Assembly (NCBI GenBank): GCA_002269645.1
Contig: NIVC01003740.1
Coordinates: 1 to 64,000, forward strand
Source of the DNA: Macrostomum lignano
Lineage: Eukaryota
Direction of reading: 5' to 3'
DNA: 64,000 nt
The translations under genes and the position numbers were made by a program. Under the pieces are notes generated by a model that was given only the letters and a program-made list of their open reading frames with translations, was not told the DNA's origin and ran no database searches. Below, piece after piece: positions 3,162 to 62,405 of this stretch (its first letter is position 1; every line of letters starts with the position of its first letter).

Positions 3162-3790
3162 GGGTTCTGATAGCACATGGATAAAACTCGTTCTTCCAGG
3201 CTACATTCTCCCGCTAGAATCTTGAGGTTTTACAGATCCTATTCACAGGACATTGGCATTAACCAGCTAAAGGTGGGTTTATCTTCAGGTTGCAAATGTC
3301 TTCAGGCTTCAAACCTCCGCACACCTCAGGCAGTGAAACACAAAGTTAGCCCACTGATTTACAAAAATGTCAAGCAAAATGCAGAGCAGGAGGCCGCCAG
3401 AGGAGAGACGCGGATACAGTGAGAAGGTGCAGCAAATCTTCACTTATGCCGAAAGGGAAGCCATGTGCTCACTCAGCACTGGAGCGATGCAAAATGACAA
3501 GATTCGAAAGCGAAATGGCAAAATCAGCAACCGATTAACAGGCGAGTTAAAAATGGTTTTATAATATAAGATTGTCAAATGCTCGCGCAGCTCAACTGAT
3601 TGAAGCAATAAAGCAATATGCAACTGACTAGAACAACAACCGTGAGGCGGCGGCTTCAAAGTGCCAATAAAAATTAAAGGAAACAACTGTCTGCTTTGGG
3701 AGTGAGGATTCAGAACGAACATCAGCAGATCTTTTTATATAGCAATAAACAAAATTGCGTAAACAAAGTCTTTAAAAAGATATTTGTAGT

Positions 3791-4514
3791 CCAATCTACA
3801 GCAAGATTATTCCAATCTACAGCAAGATTATTCCAATCTACAGCAAGATTATTCCAACCTACAGCAAGATTATTCCAATCTACAGCAAGATTATTCCAAT
3901 CTATAGCAAGATTATTCCAACCTACAGCAAGATTATTCCAATCTACAGCAAGATTATTCCAATCTACAGCAAGATTATTCCAATCTATAGCAAGATTATT
4001 CCAACCTACAGCAAGATTATTCCAATCTACAGCAAGATTATTCCAATCTACAGCAAGATTATTCCAATCTACAGCAAGATTATTCCAACCTACGGCAAGA
4101 TTATTCCAATCTACAGCAAGATTATTCCAATCTACAGCAAGATTATTCCAACCTACAGCAAGATTATTCCAATCTATAGCAAGATTATTCCAACCTACAG
4201 CAAGATTATTCCAATCTACAGCAAGATTATTCCAATCTATAGCAAGATTATTCCAACCTACAGCAAGATTATTCCAATCTACAGCAAGATTATTCCAATC
4301 TACAGCAAGATTATTCCAATCTACAGCAAGATTATTCCAATCTACAGCAAGATTATTCCAATCTACAGCAAGATTATTCCAATCTACAGCAAGATTATTC
4401 CAACCTACAGCAAGATTATTCCAATCTACAGCAAGATTATTCCAATCTATAGCAAGATTATTCCAACCTACAGCAAGATTATTCCAATCTACAGCAAGAT
4501 TATTCCAATCTACA
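3791..4514. repeat. Minisatellite, 21-bp unit CAATCTACAGCAAGATTATTC, immediately 3' of the DLGAP stop
   Basis: Tandem copies; produces the QSTARLF and NNLAVDW repeat ORFs. Confidence 0.95.
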
Positions 4515-4521
4515 GGCAGAT

Positions 4522-7500
4522 TCATGCAAAGATTTGGACGCCCTCGGCCCCTTTAGCCTCAGCTGCATGGCTGGGTGCCGCGGAATCTTCCGCGTGCTGC
4601 AGCCGCTGCCTGCCTCGCCGCTTCAGCTCAGCGAGACGCTCTCGACGCTGACGCTCCGCCAAGGCTGGCTGCTTCGCCGGCTGCTGCTGTCGCTGCTGCT
4701 GTCTGGGTGGAGCTCTGGACGGCTTTCGCTTCTGCAGCGGCTCCCGTGGCTGCTGCGGTGCCGGAGGCGAAGGCGGCGCTGGCGGCACCCGCCGGAACTG
4801 GCAGTCGCGGATCTGCCTGCACGTGGCCAGCATCCGCCCGATGTCCTGCAGCTGCAGGCAGCAGATGGCCCAGAAGCCGTTCAGGTCGCAGTACTGGGTG
4901 ACCCCGTTGGCCATGTTGTCCTCGCAGAGGCCGCGGAACTGCGCGAGCTTCTCGGTGAGCAGCAGGCGGGCCTTGCCGGCCGACACCCGGAGAATCCCCG
5001 ACACTGCAGTGACACAGGATCAGTGACTCACCTCCTCAGACAGGGAATCAGTGACTCACCTCCTCAGACAGGGCATCAGTGACTCACCTCCTCAGACAGG
5101 GAATCAGTGACTCACCTCCTCAGACAGGGGATCAGTGACTCACCTCCTCAGACAGGGGATCAGTGACTCACCTCCTCAGACAGGGAATCAGTGACTCACC
5201 TCCTCAGACAGGGAATCAGTGACTCACCTCCTCAGACAGGGAATCAGTGACTCACCTCCTCAGACAGGGAATCGGTGACTCACCTCCTCAGACAGGGAAT
5301 CAGTGACTCACCTCCTCAGACAGGGAATCAGTGACTCACCTCCTCAGACAGGGAATTAGTGACTCACCCTCCTCAGACAGGCCCAGGGACTCACCCTCCT
5401 CAGACAGGCCCAGGGACTCACCCTCCTCAGACAGGCCCAAGGACTCACCCTCCTCAGACAGGCCCAGGGACTCACCCTCCTCAGACAGGCCCAGGGACTC
5501 ACCCTCCTCAGACAGGCCCAGGGACTCACCCTCCTCAGACAGGCCCAGGGACTCACCCTCCTCAGACAGGCCCAGGGACTCACCCTCCTCAGACAGGCCC
5601 AGGGACTCACCCTCCTCAGACAGGCCCAAGGACTCACCCTCCTCAGACAGGCCCAGGGACTCACCCTCCTCAGACAGGCCCAGGGACTCACCCTCCTCAG
5701 ACAGGCCCAAGGACTCATCATCCAGGCAGGCCTCAATCCAGTCGGTGTCGGCGCGGATCCGCTGCTCCTCCCGCTCGGCCAGCAGCAGGAAGTAGCGCCC
5801 GGCGCTGGACGCTCCGCCATCGGCGGCGGTGTCGTCGGAGGCGGCCCGGCGGCGGCCACTGACGATGAGGCCTCCAGGCAGAGGGAGCGGGTCATGCCGG
5901 CCGCCAGCACCTGGGCGCTGCGCAGGGCGGCGCTGATCATGATGAGCGAGGACCGCTCCGTCGGCGATGTGGCTGCCGCGGTCGCCCCAGTGGAGTCTCG
6001 GCTGGCCGCCGCGCCGGCCACCGACGCCTTTGCCGCCGCAGCAGCCTTTAATGAACGGACAGCCTCGGCACTGGCGTCAGAGCGGCTTCTGGCCTGAGAG
6101 ACGGCAGTGGAGGTGGAGAAGAAGATTGCCTTCAGATTGCACACCATCAGGTTGCACACCATCAGGTTGCACACCATCAGGTTGCACATCATCAGGTTGC
6201 ACACCATCAGGTTGCACACCATCAGGTTGCACATCATCAGGGTGCACATCATCAGGTTGCACACCATCAGGTTGCACACCATCAGGTTGCACACCATCAG
6301 GTTGCACACCATCAGGTTGCACATCATCAGGTTGCACACCATCAGGTTGCACATCATCAGGTTGCACACCATCAGGTTGCACATCATCAGGTTGCACACC
6401 ATCAGGTTGCACATCATCAGGTTGCACACCATCAGGTTGCACATCATCAGGGTGCACACCATCAGGTTGCACACCATCAGGTTGCACACCATCAGGAATT
6501 TTCTTCAATATAATTATTTTTATGATACTTCGCTCCTATGTATCATACCATATCTGCATGGTAACTATTCGAGTTTGAGTAGCCCTAGCCCATAGCCGCT
6601 CGAATCCGCACACCAACCTTCCTAGCGGCCAGCGATCGCTTCTGGCCGTTGAGTTTCCTGGCGGCGTTGGCGCCGCCGCTCCTGAGCGCAACCGGGGCGC
6701 CGGCCTCTTCGGCGTCGGCAGTCGCGCTGGGGCTGGCGATGCCGTCGGAGTCTTCGGCGGGACCCGTTGGCTGGGCGGCAACTGGGGAGCTGGCGGCTGC
6801 TGCGGAGTTTGGGGCATGGAAGGGTGCTCTGGATTGGCTGCGGCGGCATAAACTACTGTGAGTAGCCACCGAATTTCACACTGTAAAAAGCATTGAAAGT
6901 CGAATTATCCTCTTTACAGACAATGCGTACCAGATCTGATACACATACAAGGGTCCAAAATCTCACCCCATGAGATAGGGGATTCTAAACTCTCACCCTG
7001 TGAGATAGGGGATTCTAAACTCTCACCCCGTAGGATAGGAGATTCTAAAATCTCTCTCCAGGAGATATGAGATTCTAAACTCTCACCCCACGAGATAGGA
7101 GATTCTAAACTCTCACCCCGTGAGATAGGAGATTCTAAACTCTCACCCCACGAGATAGGAGATTCTAAACTCTTACCCCACGAGATAGGAGATTCTAAAC
7201 TCTCACCCCATGAGATAGGAGATTCTTAACTCTCACCCCACGAGATAGGAGATTCTAAACTCTCACCCCACGAGATAGGAGATTCTAAACTCTCACCCCG
7301 TGAGATAGGAGATTCTAAACTCCCACCCCGCGAGATAGGAGATTCTAAACTCTCACCCGTGAGATAGGAGATTCTAAACTCTCACCCCGTGGGATAGGAG
7401 ATTCTAAACTCTCACCCGTGAAATAGGAGATTCTAAACCCTCACCCCTCACATAGGATAGACCAGAATTCTCGAACTACGGAACCCCAAAACCCAGCTTC

Positions 7501-10500
7501 ATTCTCCACCTGGCTCAGCCGCTGGGAGCAGCTCTGGCGCTGGCGCAGCTGCGGACGTCGAGACGGCGCTGGCGCTCGAGTTGGGCGCCGCGGCCGTGAC
7601 AGAGGCGCCAGAAAAACCGGCCAGGCGTTTCGGCAAGCTGCTCTCGGCGAAGGTCACCACTTGAGAGCTCGGCGGTGGCGCACGAGTGCCAAGGCGGTTG
7701 CCGGCTTCGCCTCCAGCGCCGAGGTCGGGATGGTCAGGCCTGGCTGCTGGGATCTCTGCTGCAGCTGGAGGGTTGAAGATTGGCGGCAAAGACTCCGTGT
7801 GATGATGGGACTTCCAGACTGAAATTTTCAAATTCACTGACAACAGCAGTACCAACACAGACTGAAATTTTCAAATTCACTGACAACAGCAGTAGCAACA
7901 CAGACTGAAATTTCAAATTCACTGACAACAGCAGTAGCAACACAGACTGAAATTTCAAATTCACTGACAACAGCAGTACCAACACAGACTGAAAATTTCA
8001 AATTCACTGACAACAGCAGTACCAACACAGACTGAAATTTTCAAATTCACTGACAACAGCAGTAGCAACACAGACTGAAATTTCAAATTCACTGACAACA
8101 GCAGTACCAACACAGACTGAAAATTTCAAATTCACTGACAACAGCAGTACCAACACAGACTGAAATTTTCAAATTCACTGACAACAGCAGTACCAACACA
8201 GACTGAAATTTCAAATTCACTGACAACAGCAGTACCAACACAGACTGAAATTTTCAAATTCACTGACAACAGCAGTACCAACACAGACTGAAATTTTCAA
8301 ATTCACTGACAACAGCAGTAGCAACACAGACTGAAAAGTGCTCTGACACTGCCCGCCTACTCAATACAAATCTCAGGTCCCAGATGGAGCAAACAAGCAG
8401 GATTCCCTCACCGGGCTGCTGCGCCTCCAGCAGCTGAGGCTCGCCAATGTCGAACCGCCGCCGGCGCTTCGTCCGCCGCGGCAGCCGATTGAGAAACTTG
8501 CGAATGGCGGCCAGCGGTGCGGCTGCCGACGAGCTCGGAGCCGCCGGGGCTTCTACCGGGGCTTCCGCCGCCGTTGCCGCCGGGGTCTCTTCGGCACCGT
8601 CGAAGTCGGCCTTAGCCGGCGGCTGCTGCGAGCCGGCGGCGGCGGAGCGGGTCTTCATGCGGGCCAGCCGGCCCAGCAGGGACCGCGGCTTCTTGGCGGC
8701 GGTGGCAGCGGCTGGCGGTGGGACGGCGGCCGCCGGCTCGGCGGGGCAGTTGGCAGGGTTGGGGCGGACACCGTCGGGACTGCCCCGTCAAAGTCCTGCA
8801 GCTTCACTTTGAAGGCCTTGGGCGTGGCCAGGCTGTCGATGGTCCGCTTGGCCGTGCCGGTGGACAGGTCCGAGTGCAGCGACGTAGTCATGAGGGTGGA
8901 GGTTTCCATGGTAACGGGATGTGGCGGATTGAAAATCGCTTCGATGGACAGCGGCGGGTGCGGCGGCGAGCGAACCGACTCGTTGGACACCTATTTCAAG
9001 GTCGGTGTAGAAAAGTAAAAATACACTAACCAATTCAATATTTTGGTCTACTATTAGTAGTTTACGATTTCTGACAGCAAAATCTAGCGCATCGATTAGC
9101 AATAATAGCAGCGCTAGACCTGCAGCGTACGCGCAGATTAACCTAGAATAGGGAGCAACTGTTCCACTGCAATCAGGCCGCACCTGACACACCTGAAACT
9201 TGGCGTGCCGAGGAGTGTCAGGTGTCTCAGCAGCAGCGTGCGAGGCCAAGGCGGGCGGCGCACAATCGATTAGGGGAGCGCGTGGGGGAGCCTTCTTGGA
9301 AAGGGGATTTTTCACCCACTTTCTCTTTCCCAACTGATCACGGCAAGACACAGAAGCGGAAATCAACACACCTTAAATTGACCCCTGAGTCGCCCACTAA
9401 GCAGAACCGCGAGGGAACAGAATTCGCCTTTCTAAGTTGAAGTAATACAGCGTTTGGAGTAGTTCAAGCCCTATTTTACGAGCAGCGAATGATAGGAGCG
9501 ATGCTTGAGAATGGTTCAGGGGTGACTCTTGAGAAAGGTTTAGGGGTGAATCTTGAGAAAGGTTCAGGGGTGACTCTTGAGAATGGTTCAGGGGTGACTC
9601 TTGAGAATGGTTCAGGGGTGACTCTTGAGAATGGTTCAGGGGTGACTCTTGAGAATGGTTTAGGGGTGACTCTTGAGAATGGGCGATGCTTGAGAATGGT
9701 TTAGGGGTGACTCTTGAGAATGGTTCAGGGGTGACTCTTGAGAATGGTTCAGGGGTGACTCTTGAGAATGGTTCAGGGGTGACTCTTGAGAATGGTTCAG
9801 GGGCGACTCTTGAGAATGGTTTAGGGGTGACTCTTGAGAATGGTTCAGGGGCGACTCTTGAGAATGGTTCAGGGGTGACTCTTGAGAATGGTTTAGGGGT
9901 GACTCTTGAGAATGGTTCAGGGGTGACTCTTGAGAATGGTTCAGGGGTGACTCTTGAGAATGGTTTAGGGGCGACTCTTGAGAATGGTTTAGGGGTGACT
10001 CTTGAGAATGGTTCAGGGGTGACTCTTGAGAATGGTTTAGGGGTGACTCTTGAGAATGGTTTAGGGGTGACTCTTGAGAATGGGCGATGCTTGAGAATGG
10101 TTCAGTGGTGACTCTTGAGAATGGTTTAGGGGTGACTCTTGAGAATGGTTCAGGGGTGACTCTTGAGAATGGTTCAGGGGTGACTCTTGAGAATGTTTCA
10201 GGGGTGACTCTTGAGAATGGGCGATGCTTGAGAATGGTTTAGGGGTGACTCTTGAGAATGGGCGATGCTTGAGAATGGTTTAGGGGTGACTCTTGAGAAT
10301 GGGCGATGCTTGAGAATGGTTTAGGGGTGACTCTTGAGAATGGTTTAGGGGTGACTCTTGAGAATGGTTCAGGGGTGACTCTTGAGAATGGTTCAGGGGT
10401 GACTCTTGAGAATGGTTCAGGGGTGACTCTTGAGAATGGTTTAGGGGTGACTCTTGAGAATGGTTCAGGGGTGACTCTTGAGAATGGTTCAGGGGTGACT

Positions 10501-12977
10501 CTTGAGAATGGTTTAGGGGTGACTCTTGAGAATGGTTTAGGGGTGACTCTTGAGAATGGTTCAGGGGTGACTCTTGAGAATGGTTTAGGGGTGACTCTTG
10601 AGAATGGTTCAGGGGTGACTCTTGAGAATGGTTCAGGGGCGACTCTTGAGAATGGTTTAGGGGTGACTCTTGAGAATGGTTTAGGGGTGACTCTTGAGAA
10701 TGGTTTAGGGGTGACTCTTGAGAATGGGCGATGCTTGAGAATGGTTTAGGGGCGACTCTTGAGAATGGTTTAGGGGCGACTCTTGAGAATGGTTCAGGGG
10801 TGACTCTTGAGAATGGTTTAGGGGTGACTCTTGAGAATGGGCGATGCTTGAGAATGGTTTAGGGGCGACTCTTGAGAATGGTTTAGGGGTGACTCTTGAG
10901 AATGGTTCAGGGGCGACTCTTGAGAATGGTTCAGGGGTGACTCTTGAGAATGGTTTAGGGGTGACTCTTGAGAATGGGCGATGCTTGAGAATGGTTTAGG
11001 GGTGACTCTTGAGAATGGGCGATGCTTGAGAATGGTTTAGGGGTGACTCTTGAGAATGGTTTAGGGGCGACTCTTGAGAATGGTTTAGGGGTGACTCTTG
11101 AGAATGGTTCAGGGGTGACTCTTGAGAATGGTTCAGGGGTGACTCTTGAGAATGGTTCAGGGGTGACTCTTGAGAATGGTTCAGGGGTGACTCTTGAGAA
11201 TGGTTCAGGGGTGACTCTTGAGAAAGGTTTAGGGGTGACTTTGAGAATGTTTCAGGGGTGACTCTTGAGAATGGGCGATGCTTGAGAATGGTTTAGGGGC
11301 GACTCTTGAGAATGGTTCAGGGGTGACTCTTGAGAATGGTTTAGGGGTGACTCTTGAGAATGGGCGATGCTTGAGAATGGTTTAGGGGCGACTCTTGAGA
11401 ATGGTTTAGGGGCGACTCTTGAGAATGGTTCAGGGGCGACTCTAGAGAATGGTTTAGGGGTGACTCTTGAGAATGGTTTAGGGGTGACTCTTGAGAATGG
11501 GCGATGCTTGAGAATGGTTTAGGGGCGACTCTTGAGAATGGTTCAGGGGTGACTCTTGAGAATGGTTCAGGGGCGACTCTTGAGAATGGTTCAGGGGTGA
11601 CTCTTGAGAATGGTTTAGGGGTGACTCTTGAGAATGGGCGATGCTTGAGAATGGTTTAGGGGCGACTCTTGAGAATGGTTTAGGGGTGACTCTTGAGAAT
11701 GGTTCAGGGGCGACTCTTGAGAATGGTTCAGGGGTGACTCTTGAGAATGGTTCAGGGGTGACTCTTGAGAATGGTTTAGGGGTGACTCTTGAGAATGGTT
11801 CAGGGGTGACTCTTGAGAATGGTTCAGGGGTGACTCTTGAGAATGGGCGATGCTTGAGAATGATTTAGGGGCGACTCTTGAGAATGGTTTAGGGGCGACT
11901 CTTGAGAATGGTTCAGGGGCGACTCTTGAGAATGGTTTAGGGGTGACTCTTGAGAATGGTTCAGGGGCGACTCTTGAGAATGGTTCAGGGGTGACTCTTG
12001 AGAATGGGCGATGCTTGAGAATGGTTTAGGGGTGACTCTTGAGAATGGTTTAGGGGTGACTCTTGAGAATGGTTTAGGGGTGACTCTTGAGAATGGGCGA
12101 TGCTTGAGAATGGTTTAGGGGTGACTCTTGAGAATGGGCGATGCTTGAGAATGGTTTAGGGGTGACTCTTGAGAATGGTTTAGGGGCGACTCTTGAGAAT
12201 GGTTCAGGGGTGACTCTTGAGAATGGTTTAGGGGTGACTCTTGAGAAAGGTTTAGGGAAAGGTTTTAGAGGCGATGCTTGAGAATGGTTTAGAGGCGATG
12301 CTTGAGAATAATCAAATAGTCGAAGCAATTTTTGCGAATGCTTTGAGGTGGCTTGTGAGTGGTTAGCTTGCTGCTCAAGCAAAGGTGAGCCTTGCAAACT
12401 ATACTGCCAATTAGGGCTTATGGAATTGAAGGACTTATTGAGTCACCTGGCACTTGAGCAGGTAGGCCCGGTCCCTCTCAAGCTCCGCCTGTCTGGCAGC
12501 CATGAGGCTCCGCAGCCGGGAGTTCAGGCTCTCAAAGTGGGCCAGGCGGGAGGCGGTCTGTCCAGAAAAAGCTACATCACCCAGCGTAGTTGCCATGGCA
12601 ACTGCTGAGGGAGGTGGCAGCGACCGAGTCATGATGGAGTCGGCGCAAGTCGGGCTGCTGAACGCAAAGCCCTGAGGCTGTTGCTTCTGCTGCTGGCGCC
12701 TGAGGCTGCCCCGGCTGTCGAGAAAGGAGACTGGCGCCTCGGTTGGCACGAAGCGCGTGGGGCGGGGCTGCGCGTAGCGGGTGATTCGGTCCAGCGACCG
12801 GCTCTGCATTCTCGGCTGGGGCTGCGGCGGCTGGTGGTTGGTGTGCAGAAATTCGTCCAGGCGGGAGGCTCGGCCGTTCACAGCGGGGGATCGCAGCAGC
12901 GACTGGAGAGTCTCAGCTGCGGCAGCTCCGCCGCTTGAGCCTGCCGGATGCTGAGGTGGCGTTGATGACGAGAAGGT
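4522..12977 (-). CDS. DLGAP: DLGAP/SAPAP (GKAP-domain) scaffold protein; start exon not identified; three 1-nt frameshifts as assembled
   Basis: Exons (minus): 12977-12447, 9333-9193, 8990-8412, 7818-7510, 6855-6618, 6093-5692, 5003-4522, all GT-AG. The C-terminal translation GRYFLLLAEREEQRI...LSEEVSGILRVSAGKARLLLTEKLAQFRGLCEDN...DLNGFW matches the GKAP homology domain. Splice phases agree only if +1 nt is added to each of three exons. Confidence 0.8.
5020..5360 (-). repeat. Intronic minisatellite, 28-bp unit GTGAGTCACTGATTCCCTGTCTGAGGAG (sense strand)
   Basis: About 12 tandem copies in the last DLGAP intron, ending just before the acceptor. Confidence 0.95.
5361..5718 (-). repeat. Intronic minisatellite, 27-bp unit GTGAGTCCCTGGGCCTGTCTGAGGAGG (sense strand); first copy is the coding exon end
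   Basis: About 13 copies; translates as (GESLGLSEE)n in frame with the exon. Confidence 0.95.
6136..6496. repeat. Intronic minisatellite, 15-bp unit CAGGTTGCACACCAT
   Basis: Tandem copies inside DLGAP intron 6094-6617. Confidence 0.95.
6960..7445. repeat. Intronic minisatellite, ~30-bp unit CTCTCACCCCACGAGATAGGAGATTCTAAA
   Basis: Tandem copies inside DLGAP intron 6856-7509. Confidence 0.9.
7815..8337 (-). repeat. Intronic minisatellite, 43-44-bp unit TCTGTGTTGGTACTGCTGTTGTCAGTGAATTTGAAAATTTCAG (sense strand), overlapping the acceptor
   Basis: About 12 copies; the last copy supplies the TTTCAG|TCTG junction. Confidence 0.95.
9502..12310. repeat. Intronic minisatellite, 24-bp unit GACTCTTGAGAATGGTTCAGGGGT with interspersed shorter variant
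   Basis: ~2.8 kb of tandem copies; source of the LENGSGVT ORFs. Confidence 0.95.
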
Positions 12978-59800: not shown

Positions 59801-62405
59801 TTGACCAATTTTTGTAGCCTCTATAGTATTGAGCTTATAGTATTATATTAACTTATTCTAGTTGTTTTCAAAAGTGACACTCACACTGTATAGCTTGATT
59901 TATAATTTGTTTGACCAATAATATTTTCAAACAAAAATATTGATAGAGCCAAATGCTCCTACCATTATATTAAAGTACCTAAAAATAAGTAATAAATATA
60001 ATATGCTCGTAAAGATTTTTAGCTATCCTCTCCACAAAAATTTTACCTAAAACAATCAATACAAATTTTAGAGACTTTCTGCCTCGTGGTTCCGGCATTG
60101 TCACCAGGCGCCCGCTGATACTCCAGTTGTTGTACAATCCATCGGGTAGGAAGGCCTTTTTGACACAATAATTCAATAGTTAGTTACTGCTACTGTTCCT
60201 TGACCTCTTACTGTTAGCAATCTAAGAGTTGCCCACATATTCCAAACCTCCCCTGACCCCATTGCCCTATTCAAGACCTTCCCTGACCCCACCACCATCT
60301 TCAAGACATTCCCTGACCCCACCACCATCTTCAAGACATTCCCTGACCCCACCACCATCTTCAAGACATTCCCTGACTCCACCACCATCTTCAAGACCTT
60401 CCCTGACTCCACCACCATCTTCAAGACCTTCACTGGCTCCACCACCATCTTCAAGACCTTCCCTGACTCCACCACCATCTTCAAGACCTTCACTGACCCC
60501 ACCACCATCTTCAAGACCTTCACTGACCCCACTGCCATCTCGAACACCCGCCCTGACCCCACTGCCATCTCCAACACCCGCCCTGACCCCACTGCCGTCT
60601 CCAACACCCGCCCTGACCCCACTGCCGTCTCCAACACCCGCCCTGACCCCACTGCCGTCTCCAACACCCGCCCTGACCCCACTGCCATCTCCAACACCCG
60701 CCCTGACCCCACTGCCATCTCCAACACCCGCCCTGACCCCACTGCCATCTCCAACACCCGCCCTGACCCCACTGCCATCTCCAACACCCGCCCTGACCCC
60801 ACTGCCATCTCCAACACCCGCCCTGACCCCACTGCCATCTCCAACACCCGCCCTGACCCCACTGCCATCTCCAACACCCGCCCTGACCCCACTGCCATCT
60901 CCAACACCCGCCCTGACCCCACTGCCATCTCCAACACCCGCCCTGACCCCCCAACACCCGCCCTGACCCCACTGCCATCTCCAACACCCGCCCTGACTCC
61001 GCTGCGTTGGCAGCCGAGTACGCCGAGTTCGGGCACCAGCGCGGCCGGAAGTACACCAACTTCGAGGAGGTCCGCCAGGAGATCGAAGCGGAGACGGACC
61101 GGCTCACGGGCCGCAACAAGGGCATCTCCAATGTGCCAATCATGCTGCGCGTGTTCAGCCCGCACGTGCTCAATTTGACCTTAGTTGACCTGCCCGGCAT
61201 GACCAAAGTGGCTGTTGGCGACCAGCCGCCCGATATCGAGGTGCAAATCCGCAACATGCTTCTGGAGTTCATCACCAAGGAGAACTGCCTGATTCTGGCC
61301 GTCAGCCCGGCCAACTCGGACCTAGCCAACTCCGATGCGCTCAAACTTGCCAAAGAGGTTGCCGATTGTTTTTGCGTGCAAATATCGGCGCCATATTCAT
61401 TTTGCAGGTGCGGAGTTATATTAATCTGCTACTGTTCGCTCCCGCCAGGTGGACCCCGCCGGCACCCGCACCATCGGCGTCATCACCAAGCTGGACCTCA
61501 TGGACCAGGGCACCGACGCCAGGGAGGTTCTGGAGAACAAGCTGCTGCCGCTTCGCCGCGGCTACATCGGCGTGGTCAACCGATCCCAGAAGGACATCGA
61601 AGGTGAGACTGCTCACTGCTCAGACTCTACTCCACTGACTGCTCAGACTCTACTCCACTGACTGCTCAGACTCTACTCCACTGACTGCTCAGACTCTACT
61701 CCACTGACTGCTCAGACTCTACTCCACTGACTGCTCAGACTCTAATTCACCCTATAATGCCCATAGACCTCATCTACACAGCTCCCTGCTCCCCTCTGAA
61801 ACGTCACCCCAGGCCGCAAAGACATCAAGGCAGCCATGGCGGCGGAGCGGAAGTTCTTCCTGTCGCACCCGTCCTACAGGCACATGGCGGAGCGCATGGG
61901 CACCCCGTACCTGCAGCGCTGCCTTAACCAGCAGCTCACCAACCACATCCGGGAGACGCTGCCCTCCCTGCGCAGCGAGCTGCAGACCAAACTGCTAGCC
62001 ATGGAGAAGGACTACCAGGCCTACGCCAATTTTAGTCCCGACGATCCCAGCATCAAGACCAAGGCGATGATGACGTAAGCCGCCGTTTGCCAGCTGTCTG
62101 GGGTTTTTCCGCTGGGCTGCCCGCGATCATCTTTCATCCATTCCTATAGGAGGTTGTGGGGGGTTTCCATCGAGCTGATGCACTCATTCCAAGGGGGGTT
62201 AAATGTGGGGGGTTTCCATTGAGGAAATGCTTAGGCGATCGCATGAAGCAAGCCAAAGTGGCCATCTTGCAGGATGATCAACCAGTTCACTGACGAGTTC
62301 ACCCAGTCCATCGAAGGCTCCGGCGAAGTCAGCACCAAGGAGCTGTCCGGCGGAGCCAGAATCAATCGCATCTTTCACGAGAGATTCATGTACATGCTGC
62401 ATCAG
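53829..62405 (+). CDS. DNM: Dynamin (classical, shibire-like), N-terminal GTPase and start of middle domain; continues beyond the window
   Basis: join(53829-54007,60072-60145,61014-61357,61449-61602,61813-62074,62273-62405,...); phases consistent. G1 [23 protein letters not shown]3 DLPG, G4 [20 protein letters not shown]. Confidence 0.96.
56830..56925 (+). mobile_element. Helitron/HINE-like 3' terminal block in dynamin intron 1
   Basis: AAGTTTAAAGAAAATTGGTTGAG...(CTAC)n..ACAGACC-ATTTTTAGTATAT. Confidence 0.35.
57116..57401. mobile_element. MITE (286 bp), hAT or P superfamily
   Basis: Perfect 14-bp TIR CATACATGCGCAAC/GTTGCGCATGTATG; 8-bp TSD TCAACTGT at 57108-57115 and 57402-57409. Confidence 0.9.
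59281..59667. mobile_element. hAT (Charlie-like) MITE (387 bp) with internal GA-rich tract
   Basis: Imperfect TIR CAGGGGTTTGCAAACTT / AAGTTTGCCCATCCCTG; 8-bp TSD CTCTAGGG at 59273-59280 and 59668-59675. Confidence 0.85.
60250..61000. repeat. Intronic minisatellite, 30-bp unit CCCTGACCCCACTGCCATCTCCAACACCCG
   Basis: Tandem copies in dynamin intron 2, ending just before the acceptor. Confidence 0.95.
61606..61745. repeat. Intronic 23-bp tandem repeat CTGACTGCTCAGACTCTACTCCA
   Basis: Starts within a few bases of the donor of dynamin intron 4. Confidence 0.9.

What the first reader, a model, noticed from the sequence alone, without database searches (positions are those of the whole stretch)
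5004..5718. An intron built almost entirely from tandem copies of its own splice donor
Seen (sense strand): the exon ends ATGAGTCCTTGGGCCTGTCTGAGGAGG|GTGAGT. The intron is ~13 copies of GTGAGTCCCTGGGCCTGTCTGAGGAGG, then ~12 copies of a derived 28-mer GTGAGTCACTGATTCCCTGTCTGAGGAG, then the acceptor. The spliced junction GAGGAG-GTG-TCG is itself an AG|GT proto-splice site. Consequences: (i) each 27-mer offers an in-frame alternative donor adding GESLGLSEE inside the GKAP domain; (ii) each 28-mer is a pyrimidine..AG|GTGAGT unit resembling a recursive (ratchet) splice site; (iii) the layout fits the established tandem-duplication model of intron gain, possibly caught in progress (inference).
Basis: partly seen in the sequence, partly recalled or inferred. 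Interest (0 to 1): 0.82.

Follow-up and report, generated by a model that had tools for sequence, protein, structure and literature searches.

The report
Splice-donor minisatellite filling an ancient intron
The last intron of a flatworm (Macrostomum lignano) GKAP/DLGAP-family gene is filled by a variable tandem repeat born from the exon-intron junction, so the splice donor is repeated 25 times; the intron position itself is ancient, and junction-spanning repeats like this are already known in human genes such as F7 and IFI6.

Summary
On the minus strand, intron 5 (window 5691..5004, 688 nt) of a Macrostomum lignano GKAP-domain gene has three parts. These are 12 copies of a 27-mer, 12 copies of a related 28-mer, and a diverged 28-nt terminal unit that carries the acceptor. 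The last 27 nt of the exon are copy 0 of the 27-mer. All 25 units start with GTGAGT. Thirteen of these donors are in frame, each extra unit adding GESLGLSEE; the other 12 would give a premature stop.

A phase-1 intron sits at the homologous codon in fish DLGAP1, rhinoceros DLGAP5-like and two unnamed eukaryotic contigs.

The array is a local minisatellite. It was probably seeded by slippage between TGAGTC in the exon (GATGAGTCC) and in the intron head (GGTGAGTCA), 27 nt apart. It varies between gene copies (12+12, 9+14 and 22+2 units). The genome around it is rich in arrays: 27 arrays cover 26% of this window.

RNA-derived annotation of three gene copies uses only the first donor.

The architecture matches known human cases (F7 IVS7, IFI6, CBS), where the most upstream donor is used. 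Alternative or recursive use is untested.

The parts
5692..6102 (-). Exon 5 of the GKAP-domain gene (N-terminal half of the GH1/GKAP domain). It ends ...DWIEACLDDESLGLSEE plus the first base (G) of a split Val codon.
   Evidence: tblastn of annotated M. lignano protein P0003. The acceptor tctctcag|GCC was read. Pfam PF03359, E=2.9e-16.
5692..5718 (-). Exonic 'copy 0' of the repeat, ATGAGTCCTTGGGCCTGTCTGAGGAGG, encoding (D)ESLGLSEE. It is the ancestral coding sequence and the source of the 27-mer.
   Evidence: The motif L-S-E-E aligns with L-P-E-D, I-P-D-E, L-T-E-E and T-S-E of homologues, and the exon length is normal.
5686..5691 (-). Annotated (most upstream) 5' splice site, AGG|GTGAGT, phase 1.
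   Evidence: The RNA-derived protein models P0001-P0003 read ...LSEE-VSGILR. The annotation method is described in PMC5730564.
5368..5691 (-). Twelve intronic 27-mers, GTGAGTCC(C/T)TGGGCCTGTCTGAGGAGG. The reading frame stays open as (GESLGLSEE)12. Each unit starts with a donor identical in context to the authentic one.
5032..5367 (-). Twelve 28-mers, GTGAGTCACTGAT(T/C/G)CCCTGTCTGAGGAG. The head matches the terminal unit and the tail matches the exon tail. The donors are GAG|GTGAGT. Using the 2nd to 12th of them gives a frameshift or premature stop. Each unit also contains TGAGTCA.
5004..5031 (-). Terminal diverged unit, GTGAGTCACTGATCCTGTGTCACTGCAG. It holds a candidate branch site (CTGAT), a pyrimidine-rich stretch, and the only acceptor used (CAG|TG).
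   Evidence: The acceptor is the same in L001-L003.
4522..5003 (-). Exon 6: the rest of the GKAP domain (VSGILRVSAGKARLLL...FWAICCLQL...) and the C-terminus. The stop codon TGA is at 4524-4522.
   Evidence: 100% identity to P0003 residues 536-695.

Best explanation
This is an ancient phase-1 intron of a GKAP/DLGAP-family gene. In the Macrostomum lignano lineage its interior has been replaced by a locally born minisatellite whose first unit is the last 27 nt of the exon.

Likely origin (inferred): the exon tail begins G-ATGAGTC-C and the intron head begins G-GTGAGTC-A, so TGAGTC recurs at a 27-nt spacing. Replication slippage or unequal exchange between these two copies duplicated the exon tail together with the donor. 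Further slippage, exchange and conversion expanded the array. A 28-nt subfamily arose that combines the intron head (GTGAGTCACTGAT) with the exon tail (CCTGTCTGAGGAG).

The array behaves as a VNTR (variable number tandem repeat). Different gene copies carry 12+12, 9+14 or 22+2 units.

Splicing (shown only through RNA-derived annotation) joins the most upstream donor to the single CAG acceptor in the 28-nt terminal unit. The other 24 GTGAGT sites are removed as silent pseudo-donors. By analogy with human F7 IVS7, the first donor probably wins by position, not by sequence: 5'-to-3', first-come or exon-definition selection.

The array most likely has no function of its own. One by-product is that loss of donor 1 could be rescued in frame by donor 2, adding 9 residues.
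For: Anatomy: (TRF score 822).

Host gene and organism: 99% identity to M. lignano PAA75649 and a GKAP Pfam hit.

Ancient position: the exon junctions were mapped in fish DLGAP1 (GAAGACA|gtatgt...accag|TCCTG) and in rhino DLGAP5-like (GATGAAG|gtgagg...tttag|CCAGA). They were also mapped in two unnamed ENA eukaryote loci (GAAGAGG|gtttgt...ttttcag|TGTCAGG and TCAGAAG|gtatgg...ttttcag|TGGAAGG). All are phase 1 and fall in the same alignment column as the M. lignano intron. Many genomic ORF fragments of DLGAP1-5 start their homology exactly at (V/I)LGKIR or AKDLIR, preceded by translated pyrimidine tracts.

Direction exon to repeat: the exon tail aligns with the conserved L-x-E-E/D motif, and the distance from the YF/WF motif to the intron is 33 residues against 30-33 in homologues.

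VNTR behaviour.

Genome context: 27 arrays cover 26.5% of the window, and every intron of this gene holds its own array. Only this array includes the donor. Tandem repeats make up 15% of the genome (PMC5730564).

First-donor use: three RNA-derived gene models read LSEE-VSGILR with no insert.

Precedent and mechanism of donor choice: PMC1557585.
Against: No RNA reads were examined directly. The 28-mer donors match the U1 consensus better than the authentic donor (7/9 against 6/9 positions). Transcripts that use them would carry premature stops and could be removed by nonsense-mediated decay (NMD), which would hide their use.

The slippage origin is inferred from microhomology alone.

The 28-mer is not an exact product of any single simple duplication. 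Relative to the exon-tail plus intron-head junction it has one G fewer and two bases more.

The near-constant number of units (25, 24, 25) despite very different 27-mer to 28-mer ratios is not explained by neutral expansion and contraction alone.

No named protostome or flatworm orthologue could be retrieved. The claim of antiquity therefore rests on two vertebrate paralogue families plus two unidentified eukaryotes.
Confidence: 0.8

Rival explanations
1. Recent intron gain by tandem duplication of an AGGT-containing exon segment (Rogers model), caught in progress.
For: The 27-mers are copies of the adjacent exon tail. The spliced junction GAG|GTG is a proto-splice site. Real cases of this mechanism exist (PMC3265369, PMC4974935, PMC2891723).
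Against: A phase-1 intron occupies the same alignment column in DLGAP1, in DLGAP5-like and in two other eukaryote loci. The acceptor is a unique CAG in a non-repeat tail, not the AG of the last repeat. The units contain no sequence from the downstream exon. A plain duplication of the 27-nt tail would yield a 26-nt GT..AG interval and shift the frame (direct reading).
Confidence: 0.04
2. The repeated donors are used functionally. Either a ladder of in-frame alternative 5' splice sites inserts 1-12 GESLGLSEE units into the GH1 domain, as in human IFI6 and CBS where the first two pseudo-sites are used, or the 28-mers act as recursive AG|GTGAGT ratchet sites.
For: Thirteen donors have identical context and all are in frame. 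In IFI6 and CBS the two pseudo-sites nearest the authentic donor are used constitutively (PMC1557585). The 28-mers carry a CTGAT branch-like motif, a TTCCCTGTCT tract and AG|GTGAGT.
Against: Three RNA-derived gene models carry no insert, and no insert-bearing isoform lies in the 90% protein cluster. The number of 27-mers differs between gene copies (9, 12, 22), which argues against a conserved coding role. The putative recursive 3' site is GAG with another AG 3 nt upstream, and the units are only 28 nt apart. Known recursive sites serve very long introns (own knowledge: Burnette 2005; Duff 2015; Sibley 2015), whereas this intron is 688 nt.
Confidence: 0.12
3. The exon tail is itself an exonised repeat unit. 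On this view the original donor lay 27 nt upstream, was inactivated (GTGAGT to ATGAGT), and the next donor took over, adding 9 residues.
For: The exon copy differs from the repeat mainly by A instead of G at the donor position. A takeover of exactly this kind is documented for an F7 patient mutation (PMC1557585).
Against: The exon tail LGLSEE aligns with the conserved (D/N)L(P/T)E(E/D) motif directly before the intron in all homologues. Removing 9 residues would leave this segment shorter (24 residues) than in any homologue (30-33).
Confidence: 0.04

Closest known systems
Human F7 intron 7 VNTR (37-bp minisatellite whose first monomer spans the exon 7/IVS7 boundary; Borensztajn et al. 2006, PMC1557585)
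   Same: A tandem array starts in the exon, so the authentic donor is followed by identical pseudo-donors. Copy number is polymorphic. Only the most upstream donor is used; here that rests on annotation.
   Different: F7 has 5-9 units with only 4 exonic nt per unit. Here there are 25 units, and the whole 27-nt unit is a copy of coding sequence that keeps the frame open. There are two unit subfamilies, and the array fills essentially the entire intron. Donor choice was tested experimentally in F7 and not here.
Human IFI6 (6-16) intron 2 minisatellite (25 pseudo-donors) and the CBS intron 13 VNTR (as summarised in PMC1557585)
   Same: A junction-spanning minisatellite with many reiterated donors. 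In IFI6 the number of pseudo-sites is comparable (25).
   Different: In IFI6 and CBS the first two pseudo-sites are used constitutively and give in-frame variants. No such isoforms are annotated for the M. lignano gene.
Intron creation by tandem genomic duplication of an AGGT-containing segment (Rogers model; Hellsten et al. 2011, PMC3265369; potato RdRp, PMC4974935)
   Same: Exon sequence that includes a splice signal is tandemly duplicated, and the duplicate is spliced out so that the mRNA is restored.
   Different: In those cases the intron is new and both splice sites come from the duplicated AGGT. Here the intron position is old, the acceptor is not repeat-derived, and the duplication only refilled an existing intron.
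Recursive (ratchet-point) splice sites of long Drosophila and vertebrate introns (own knowledge)
   Same: The 28-mers juxtapose a pyrimidine tract, an AG and GTGAGT.
   Different: The -3 position is G and a competing AG lies upstream. The spacing is 28 nt and the intron is only 688 nt. There is no RNA evidence.

Membership tests
Junction-spanning minisatellite reiterating the 5' splice site (F7 IVS7 / IFI6 / CBS type) | Tandem array whose first monomer spans the exon-intron boundary | tested here: met
   The exon tail 5718-5692 is copy 0, and the array is continuous to 5004.
Junction-spanning minisatellite reiterating the 5' splice site (F7 IVS7 / IFI6 / CBS type) | [quoted passage not shown] | tested here: met
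   Donors 1-13 are all AGG|GTGAGTC in an identical 27-nt context. Donors 14-25 are GAG|GTGAGTCA.
Junction-spanning minisatellite reiterating the 5' splice site (F7 IVS7 / IFI6 / CBS type) | Variable copy number between alleles or copies (VNTR) | tested here: met
   Window and L003 have 12+12 units, L001 has 9+14 and L002 has 22+2. Whether these loci are alleles or paralogues was not resolved.
Junction-spanning minisatellite reiterating the 5' splice site (F7 IVS7 / IFI6 / CBS type) | Most upstream donor(s) used, the rest silent | tested here: inconclusive
   Three RNA-seq-derived GenBank models use donor 1. No reads were inspected, and NMD could hide other products.
Intron gained by tandem duplication (Rogers model) | Intron absent at the homologous position in related genes | tested here: not met
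   A phase-1 intron lies in the same column in DLGAP1, DLGAP5-like and two other loci.
Intron gained by tandem duplication (Rogers model) | Both splice sites derive from the duplicated AG|GT, and intron length equals a whole number of duplication units | tested here: not met
   The acceptor CACTGCAG lies in the unique 15-nt tail of the terminal unit. The repeat's own AG is not the acceptor used.
Recursive splice site (ratchet point) | Juxtaposed strong 3' splice site (Yn-YAG) and 5' splice site (GTRAGT) | tested here: inconclusive
   The sequence is TTCCCTGTCTGAGGAG|GTGAGT. The donor is good, but the acceptor has G at -3 and an AG 3 nt upstream.
Recursive splice site (ratchet point) | Located in a very long intron, with stepwise lariat intermediates | tested here: not met
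   The intron is 688 nt. Intermediates cannot be tested with these tools.
GKAP/DLGAP protein family (host gene) | GKAP (GH1) domain above the Pfam gathering score | tested here: met
   PF03359 at 60.4 bits against a cutoff of 27. PDB hits to DLGAP1 4r0y and DLGAP5 8x9p.

The most novel reading that the evidence does not exclude
The array may not be inert. The first few pseudo-donors could be used, as in IFI6, giving GKAP isoforms with one or more GESLGLSEE inserts between two conserved stretches of the GH1 domain. Alternatively the stronger 28-mer donors could be used and the products destroyed by NMD, so that array composition sets gene output. The near-constant total of 24-25 units across copies with very different 27-mer to 28-mer ratios would then reflect selection on the array.
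Probability: 0.1. Interest if true: 0.5.

Novelty: new member of a known kind. Interest (0 to 1): 0.27.

Why it matters
It is a clean, extreme invertebrate example of a known oddity: a minisatellite that reiterates a splice donor. It has 25 donors, 13 of them in frame and sequence-identical, in an intron with almost no other content. Such loci are natural test beds for how the spliceosome picks one of many identical 5' splice sites, and M. lignano is transgenic-tractable. It also shows that exon-derived tandem duplication can completely turn over the content of an old intron. That is a caution for anyone who infers intron gain from intron sequence alone. It does not change current understanding of intron origin.

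Tried and rejected
- **Coding array:** rejected. Every 28-mer has TGA in the two frames it can be entered in, and the RNA-derived models skip the array.
- **Assembly artefact:** rejected. The structure is the same in an independent assembly of the locus, and related structures occur in two other copies.
- **Exonised repeat (direction repeat to exon):** rejected from the homologue alignment.
- **Donor-containing arrays as a general feature of this genome's arrays:** of 27 arrays in the window, only this one carries GTRAGT on the gene strand in every unit. The intron-3 array does carry a GTGAGA-type motif.
- **Named flatworm or protostome orthologues:** all three protein searches returned only the M. 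lignano proteins themselves, vertebrate DLGAP fragments, or unnamed metagenome or Logan fragments. The two non-vertebrate-looking loci, L007 and L008, therefore remain taxonomically unidentified.
- **RNA-level data for M. lignano:** none could be reached with these tools.
- **Frameshifts in the window's exons** (about 5845 and about 8780): these are homopolymer differences from the GenBank assembly, most likely assembly errors rather than biology.

Full report
**1. What is there**

The window is from the flatworm Macrostomum lignano. The spliced C-terminal protein is 99% identical to GenBank PAA75649 (BOX15_Mlig009524g4). It carries a GKAP/GH1 domain (Pfam PF03359, E=2.9e-16; PDB relatives DLGAP1 4r0y and DLGAP5 8x9p).

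The gene lies on the minus strand. Mapping the 695-aa annotated protein P0003 gives these approximate exons: 12632-12444, 8990-8413, 7768-7511, ~6800-6606, 6102-5692 and 5003-4525.

The finding covers the last intron, 5691..5004 (688 nt), plus the last 27 nt of exon 5. Unit-by-unit parsing shows:

| Element | Sequence | Window coordinates |
|---|---|---|
| Exon tail (copy 0) | ATGAGTCCTTGGGCCTGTCTGAGGAGG | 5718-5692 |
| 12 intronic 27-mers | GTGAGTCC(C/T)TGGGCCTGTCTGAGGAGG | 5691-5368 |
| 12 28-mers | GTGAGTCACTGAT(T/C/G)CCCTGTCTGAGGAG | 5367-5032 |
| Terminal 28-nt unit | GTGAGTCACTGATCCTGTGTCACTGCAG | 5031-5004 |
| Exon 6 start | TGTCGGGG... | from 5003 |

TRF reports 25 copies, 96% matches and score 822.

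**2. Consequences that can be read from the sequence**

All 25 units begin with GTGAGT.

- Donors 1-13 have the context AGG|GTGAGT. All are in frame with exon 6, and each additional unit adds GESLGLSEE.
- Donors 14-25 have the context GAG|GTGAGT, one position closer to the U1 consensus. They would produce frameshifts or premature stops.
- The array cannot be read through as coding sequence, because the 28-mers contain TGA.

**3. Is the intron new? No.**

I mapped exon junctions in homologues.

| Locus | Donor side | Acceptor side | Split codon |
|---|---|---|---|
| Fish DLGAP1 (Ilyodon, L004) | ...CCAGAAGACA\|gtatgt | accag\|TCCTGGAA | Ile after P-E-D |
| Rhinoceros DLGAP5-like (L005) | GATGAAG\|gtgagg | tttag\|CCAGAGG | Ala after P-D-E |
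| Unnamed ENA eukaryote (L007) | GAAGAGG\|gtttgt | ttttcag\|TGTCAGG (E-E^V-S-G, almost the same junction as M. lignano) | Val |
| Unnamed ENA eukaryote (L008) | TCAGAAG\|gtatgg | ttttcag\|TGGAAGG | Val |

In a MAFFT alignment all five introns fall in the same column, and all are phase 1.

Dozens of genomic ORF fragments of vertebrate DLGAP1-5 also begin their homology exactly at (V/I)LGKIR or AKDLIR, preceded by translated pyrimidine tracts.

DLGAP1-4 and DLGAP5 are old paralogue families. From my own knowledge, both have Drosophila counterparts, vulcan and mars. A shared position and phase therefore means that the intron predates their split and is ancestral for the flatworm gene too.

The anatomy also does not fit the duplication model of intron birth. 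The acceptor that is used lies in the unique tail CCTGTGTCACTGCAG, not at a repeat AG. The units contain no downstream-exon sequence.

**4. What the array is**

The exon tail is ancestral coding sequence. LGLSEE aligns with the conserved (D/N)L(P/T)E(E/D) motif before the intron, and the exon has normal length (33 residues from the YF motif, against 30-33 in homologues). The 27-mer is therefore a copy of the exon tail, not the reverse.

The exon tail starts G-ATGAGTC-C and the intron head reads G-GTGAGTC-A. The hexamer TGAGTC recurs at exactly 27 nt. This is the kind of short flanking direct repeat from which minisatellites are thought to arise by slippage or unequal exchange. That step is an inference.

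The 28-mer is a chimera. Its head, GTGAGTCACTGAT, equals the head of the terminal unit (13/13). Its tail, CCTGTCTGAGGAG, equals the exon tail. A hybrid unit, GTGAGTCACTGGGCCTGTCTGAGGAGG, in L002 links the two types.

The array is unstable over evolutionary time. Other copies of the gene in GenBank assembly GCA_002269645.1 carry 9x27+14x28 (L001) and 22x27+2x28 (L002). L003 is the same locus as the window, at 99.7% identity, and has the identical 12+12 pattern.

**5. Genome context**

Twenty-seven large arrays cover 26.5% of the window. Each of the five introns of this gene contains its own unrelated array. Arrays in a dynamin-like gene start about 6 nt after a donor and end about 15 nt before an acceptor.

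The published genome paper reports that simple and tandem repeats make up 15% of the genome (PMC5730564).

Intron 5 is thus one outcome of a genome-wide tendency. It is the single case among 27 arrays in which the array boundary fell inside the exon and took the donor with it.

**6. Which donor is used**

The GenBank gene models are derived from RNA-seq and a de novo transcriptome (PMC5730564). All three copies read ...LSEE-VSGILR..., which means donor 1 and no insert. No insert-bearing isoform is present in the protein cluster.

This is indirect evidence. I could not inspect reads, and products from the 28-mer donors would be NMD targets.

**7. Comparison with the known**

This architecture has been described before. 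[quoted passage not shown] The examples given there are:

- F7 IVS7, with 37-bp units and 5-9 sites;
- IFI6/6-16, with 25 pseudo-sites, of which the first two are used;
- CBS IVS13;
- LMNB2;
- PDGF.

For F7, mutagenesis showed that the pseudo-sites are functional. The most upstream site is nevertheless always chosen, even against downstream sites with higher U1 complementarity. I adopt that positional mechanism here by analogy.

The M. lignano case differs in four respects. The unit is entirely coding-derived and frame-preserving. The array has two subfamilies. It fills about 96-100% of the intron. It occurs in a flatworm.

**8. Verdict**

| Question | Answer |
|---|---|
| Observation | Confirmed |
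| Intron gain | Refuted |
| Alternative or recursive use | Untested; the available annotation argues against it |
| Classification | New member of a known kind, of modest interest mainly as a natural model for 5' splice-site choice |

One observation remains unexplained: the near-constant total of 24-25 units across copies that have very different unit mixes.

Noticed in passing
window 1-64000 (arrays listed): Twenty-seven large minisatellite arrays, each with a different 14-50 nt unit and mostly 300-800 bp long, cover 26.5% of the window. Most lie in introns or next to exons of GC3-rich genes.
   Followed up: partly
window 6132-6496, 6957-7447, 7815-8336, 9504-12257: Each of the other four introns of the same GKAP gene holds its own unrelated array (15-, 30-, 43- and 24-mers; the last has about 120 copies). 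These arrays are internal to the introns and do not include the splice sites.
   Followed up: yes
window 6957-7447 (minus strand): The 30-mer of intron 3 carries a donor-like GGTGAGAG in every unit, about 16 copies, although it is unrelated to the exon. This is a second array of pseudo-donors in the same gene.
   Followed up: no
window 3790-4524: The 21-mer array (35 copies) of the 3' UTR starts immediately after the TGA stop codon of the GKAP gene.
   Followed up: no
window 5004-5367: Every 28-mer and the terminal unit contain TGAGTCA, the AP-1/TRE heptamer: 13 perfect copies at 28-bp spacing. This is probably just a by-product of GTGAGT followed by CA. Whether it has enhancer activity is untested.
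   Followed up: no
window 5004-5691; L001, L002, L003: The total number of units is nearly constant (25, 24, 25; introns of 688, 663 and 678 nt), although the 27-mer to 28-mer ratio is 12:12, 9:14 and 22:2. This suggests conversion between unit types or a length constraint, and it is unexplained.
   Followed up: partly
window ~5845 and ~8780: Relative to the GenBank assembly (L003) the window has homopolymer-length differences, for example GGG against GGGG at 5845, that break the reading frame of exons 5 and 2. There are 41 gap positions in 13.9 kb. These are most likely assembly errors in the window's source.
   Followed up: partly
window 60251-61005 and 61615-61744 (+ strand, dynamin-like gene): The arrays reach almost to the splice signals. 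A 23-mer array starts about 6 nt after the donor GAAG|GTGAGA, and a 30-mer array ends about 15 nt before the acceptor TTGGCAG|CC. Branch site and pyrimidine tract therefore lie in or next to repeat sequence.
   Followed up: partly
L002 (terminal unit of the intron): In this gene copy the terminal unit starts CTGAGT instead of GTGAGT, so the last pseudo-donor is absent. A hybrid 27-mer, GTGAGTCACTGGGCC..., links the two unit types.
   Followed up: no
L007 and L008 (ENA metagenome assemblies ERZ26273219 and ERZ26222911): Large eukaryotic contigs (up to 9.9 Mb) in these metagenome assemblies encode DLGAP5-like genes. The exon junction in L007 (GAAGAGG|...|TGTCAGG, E-E^V-S-G) nearly matches that of M. 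lignano. The organism was not identified.
   Followed up: partly
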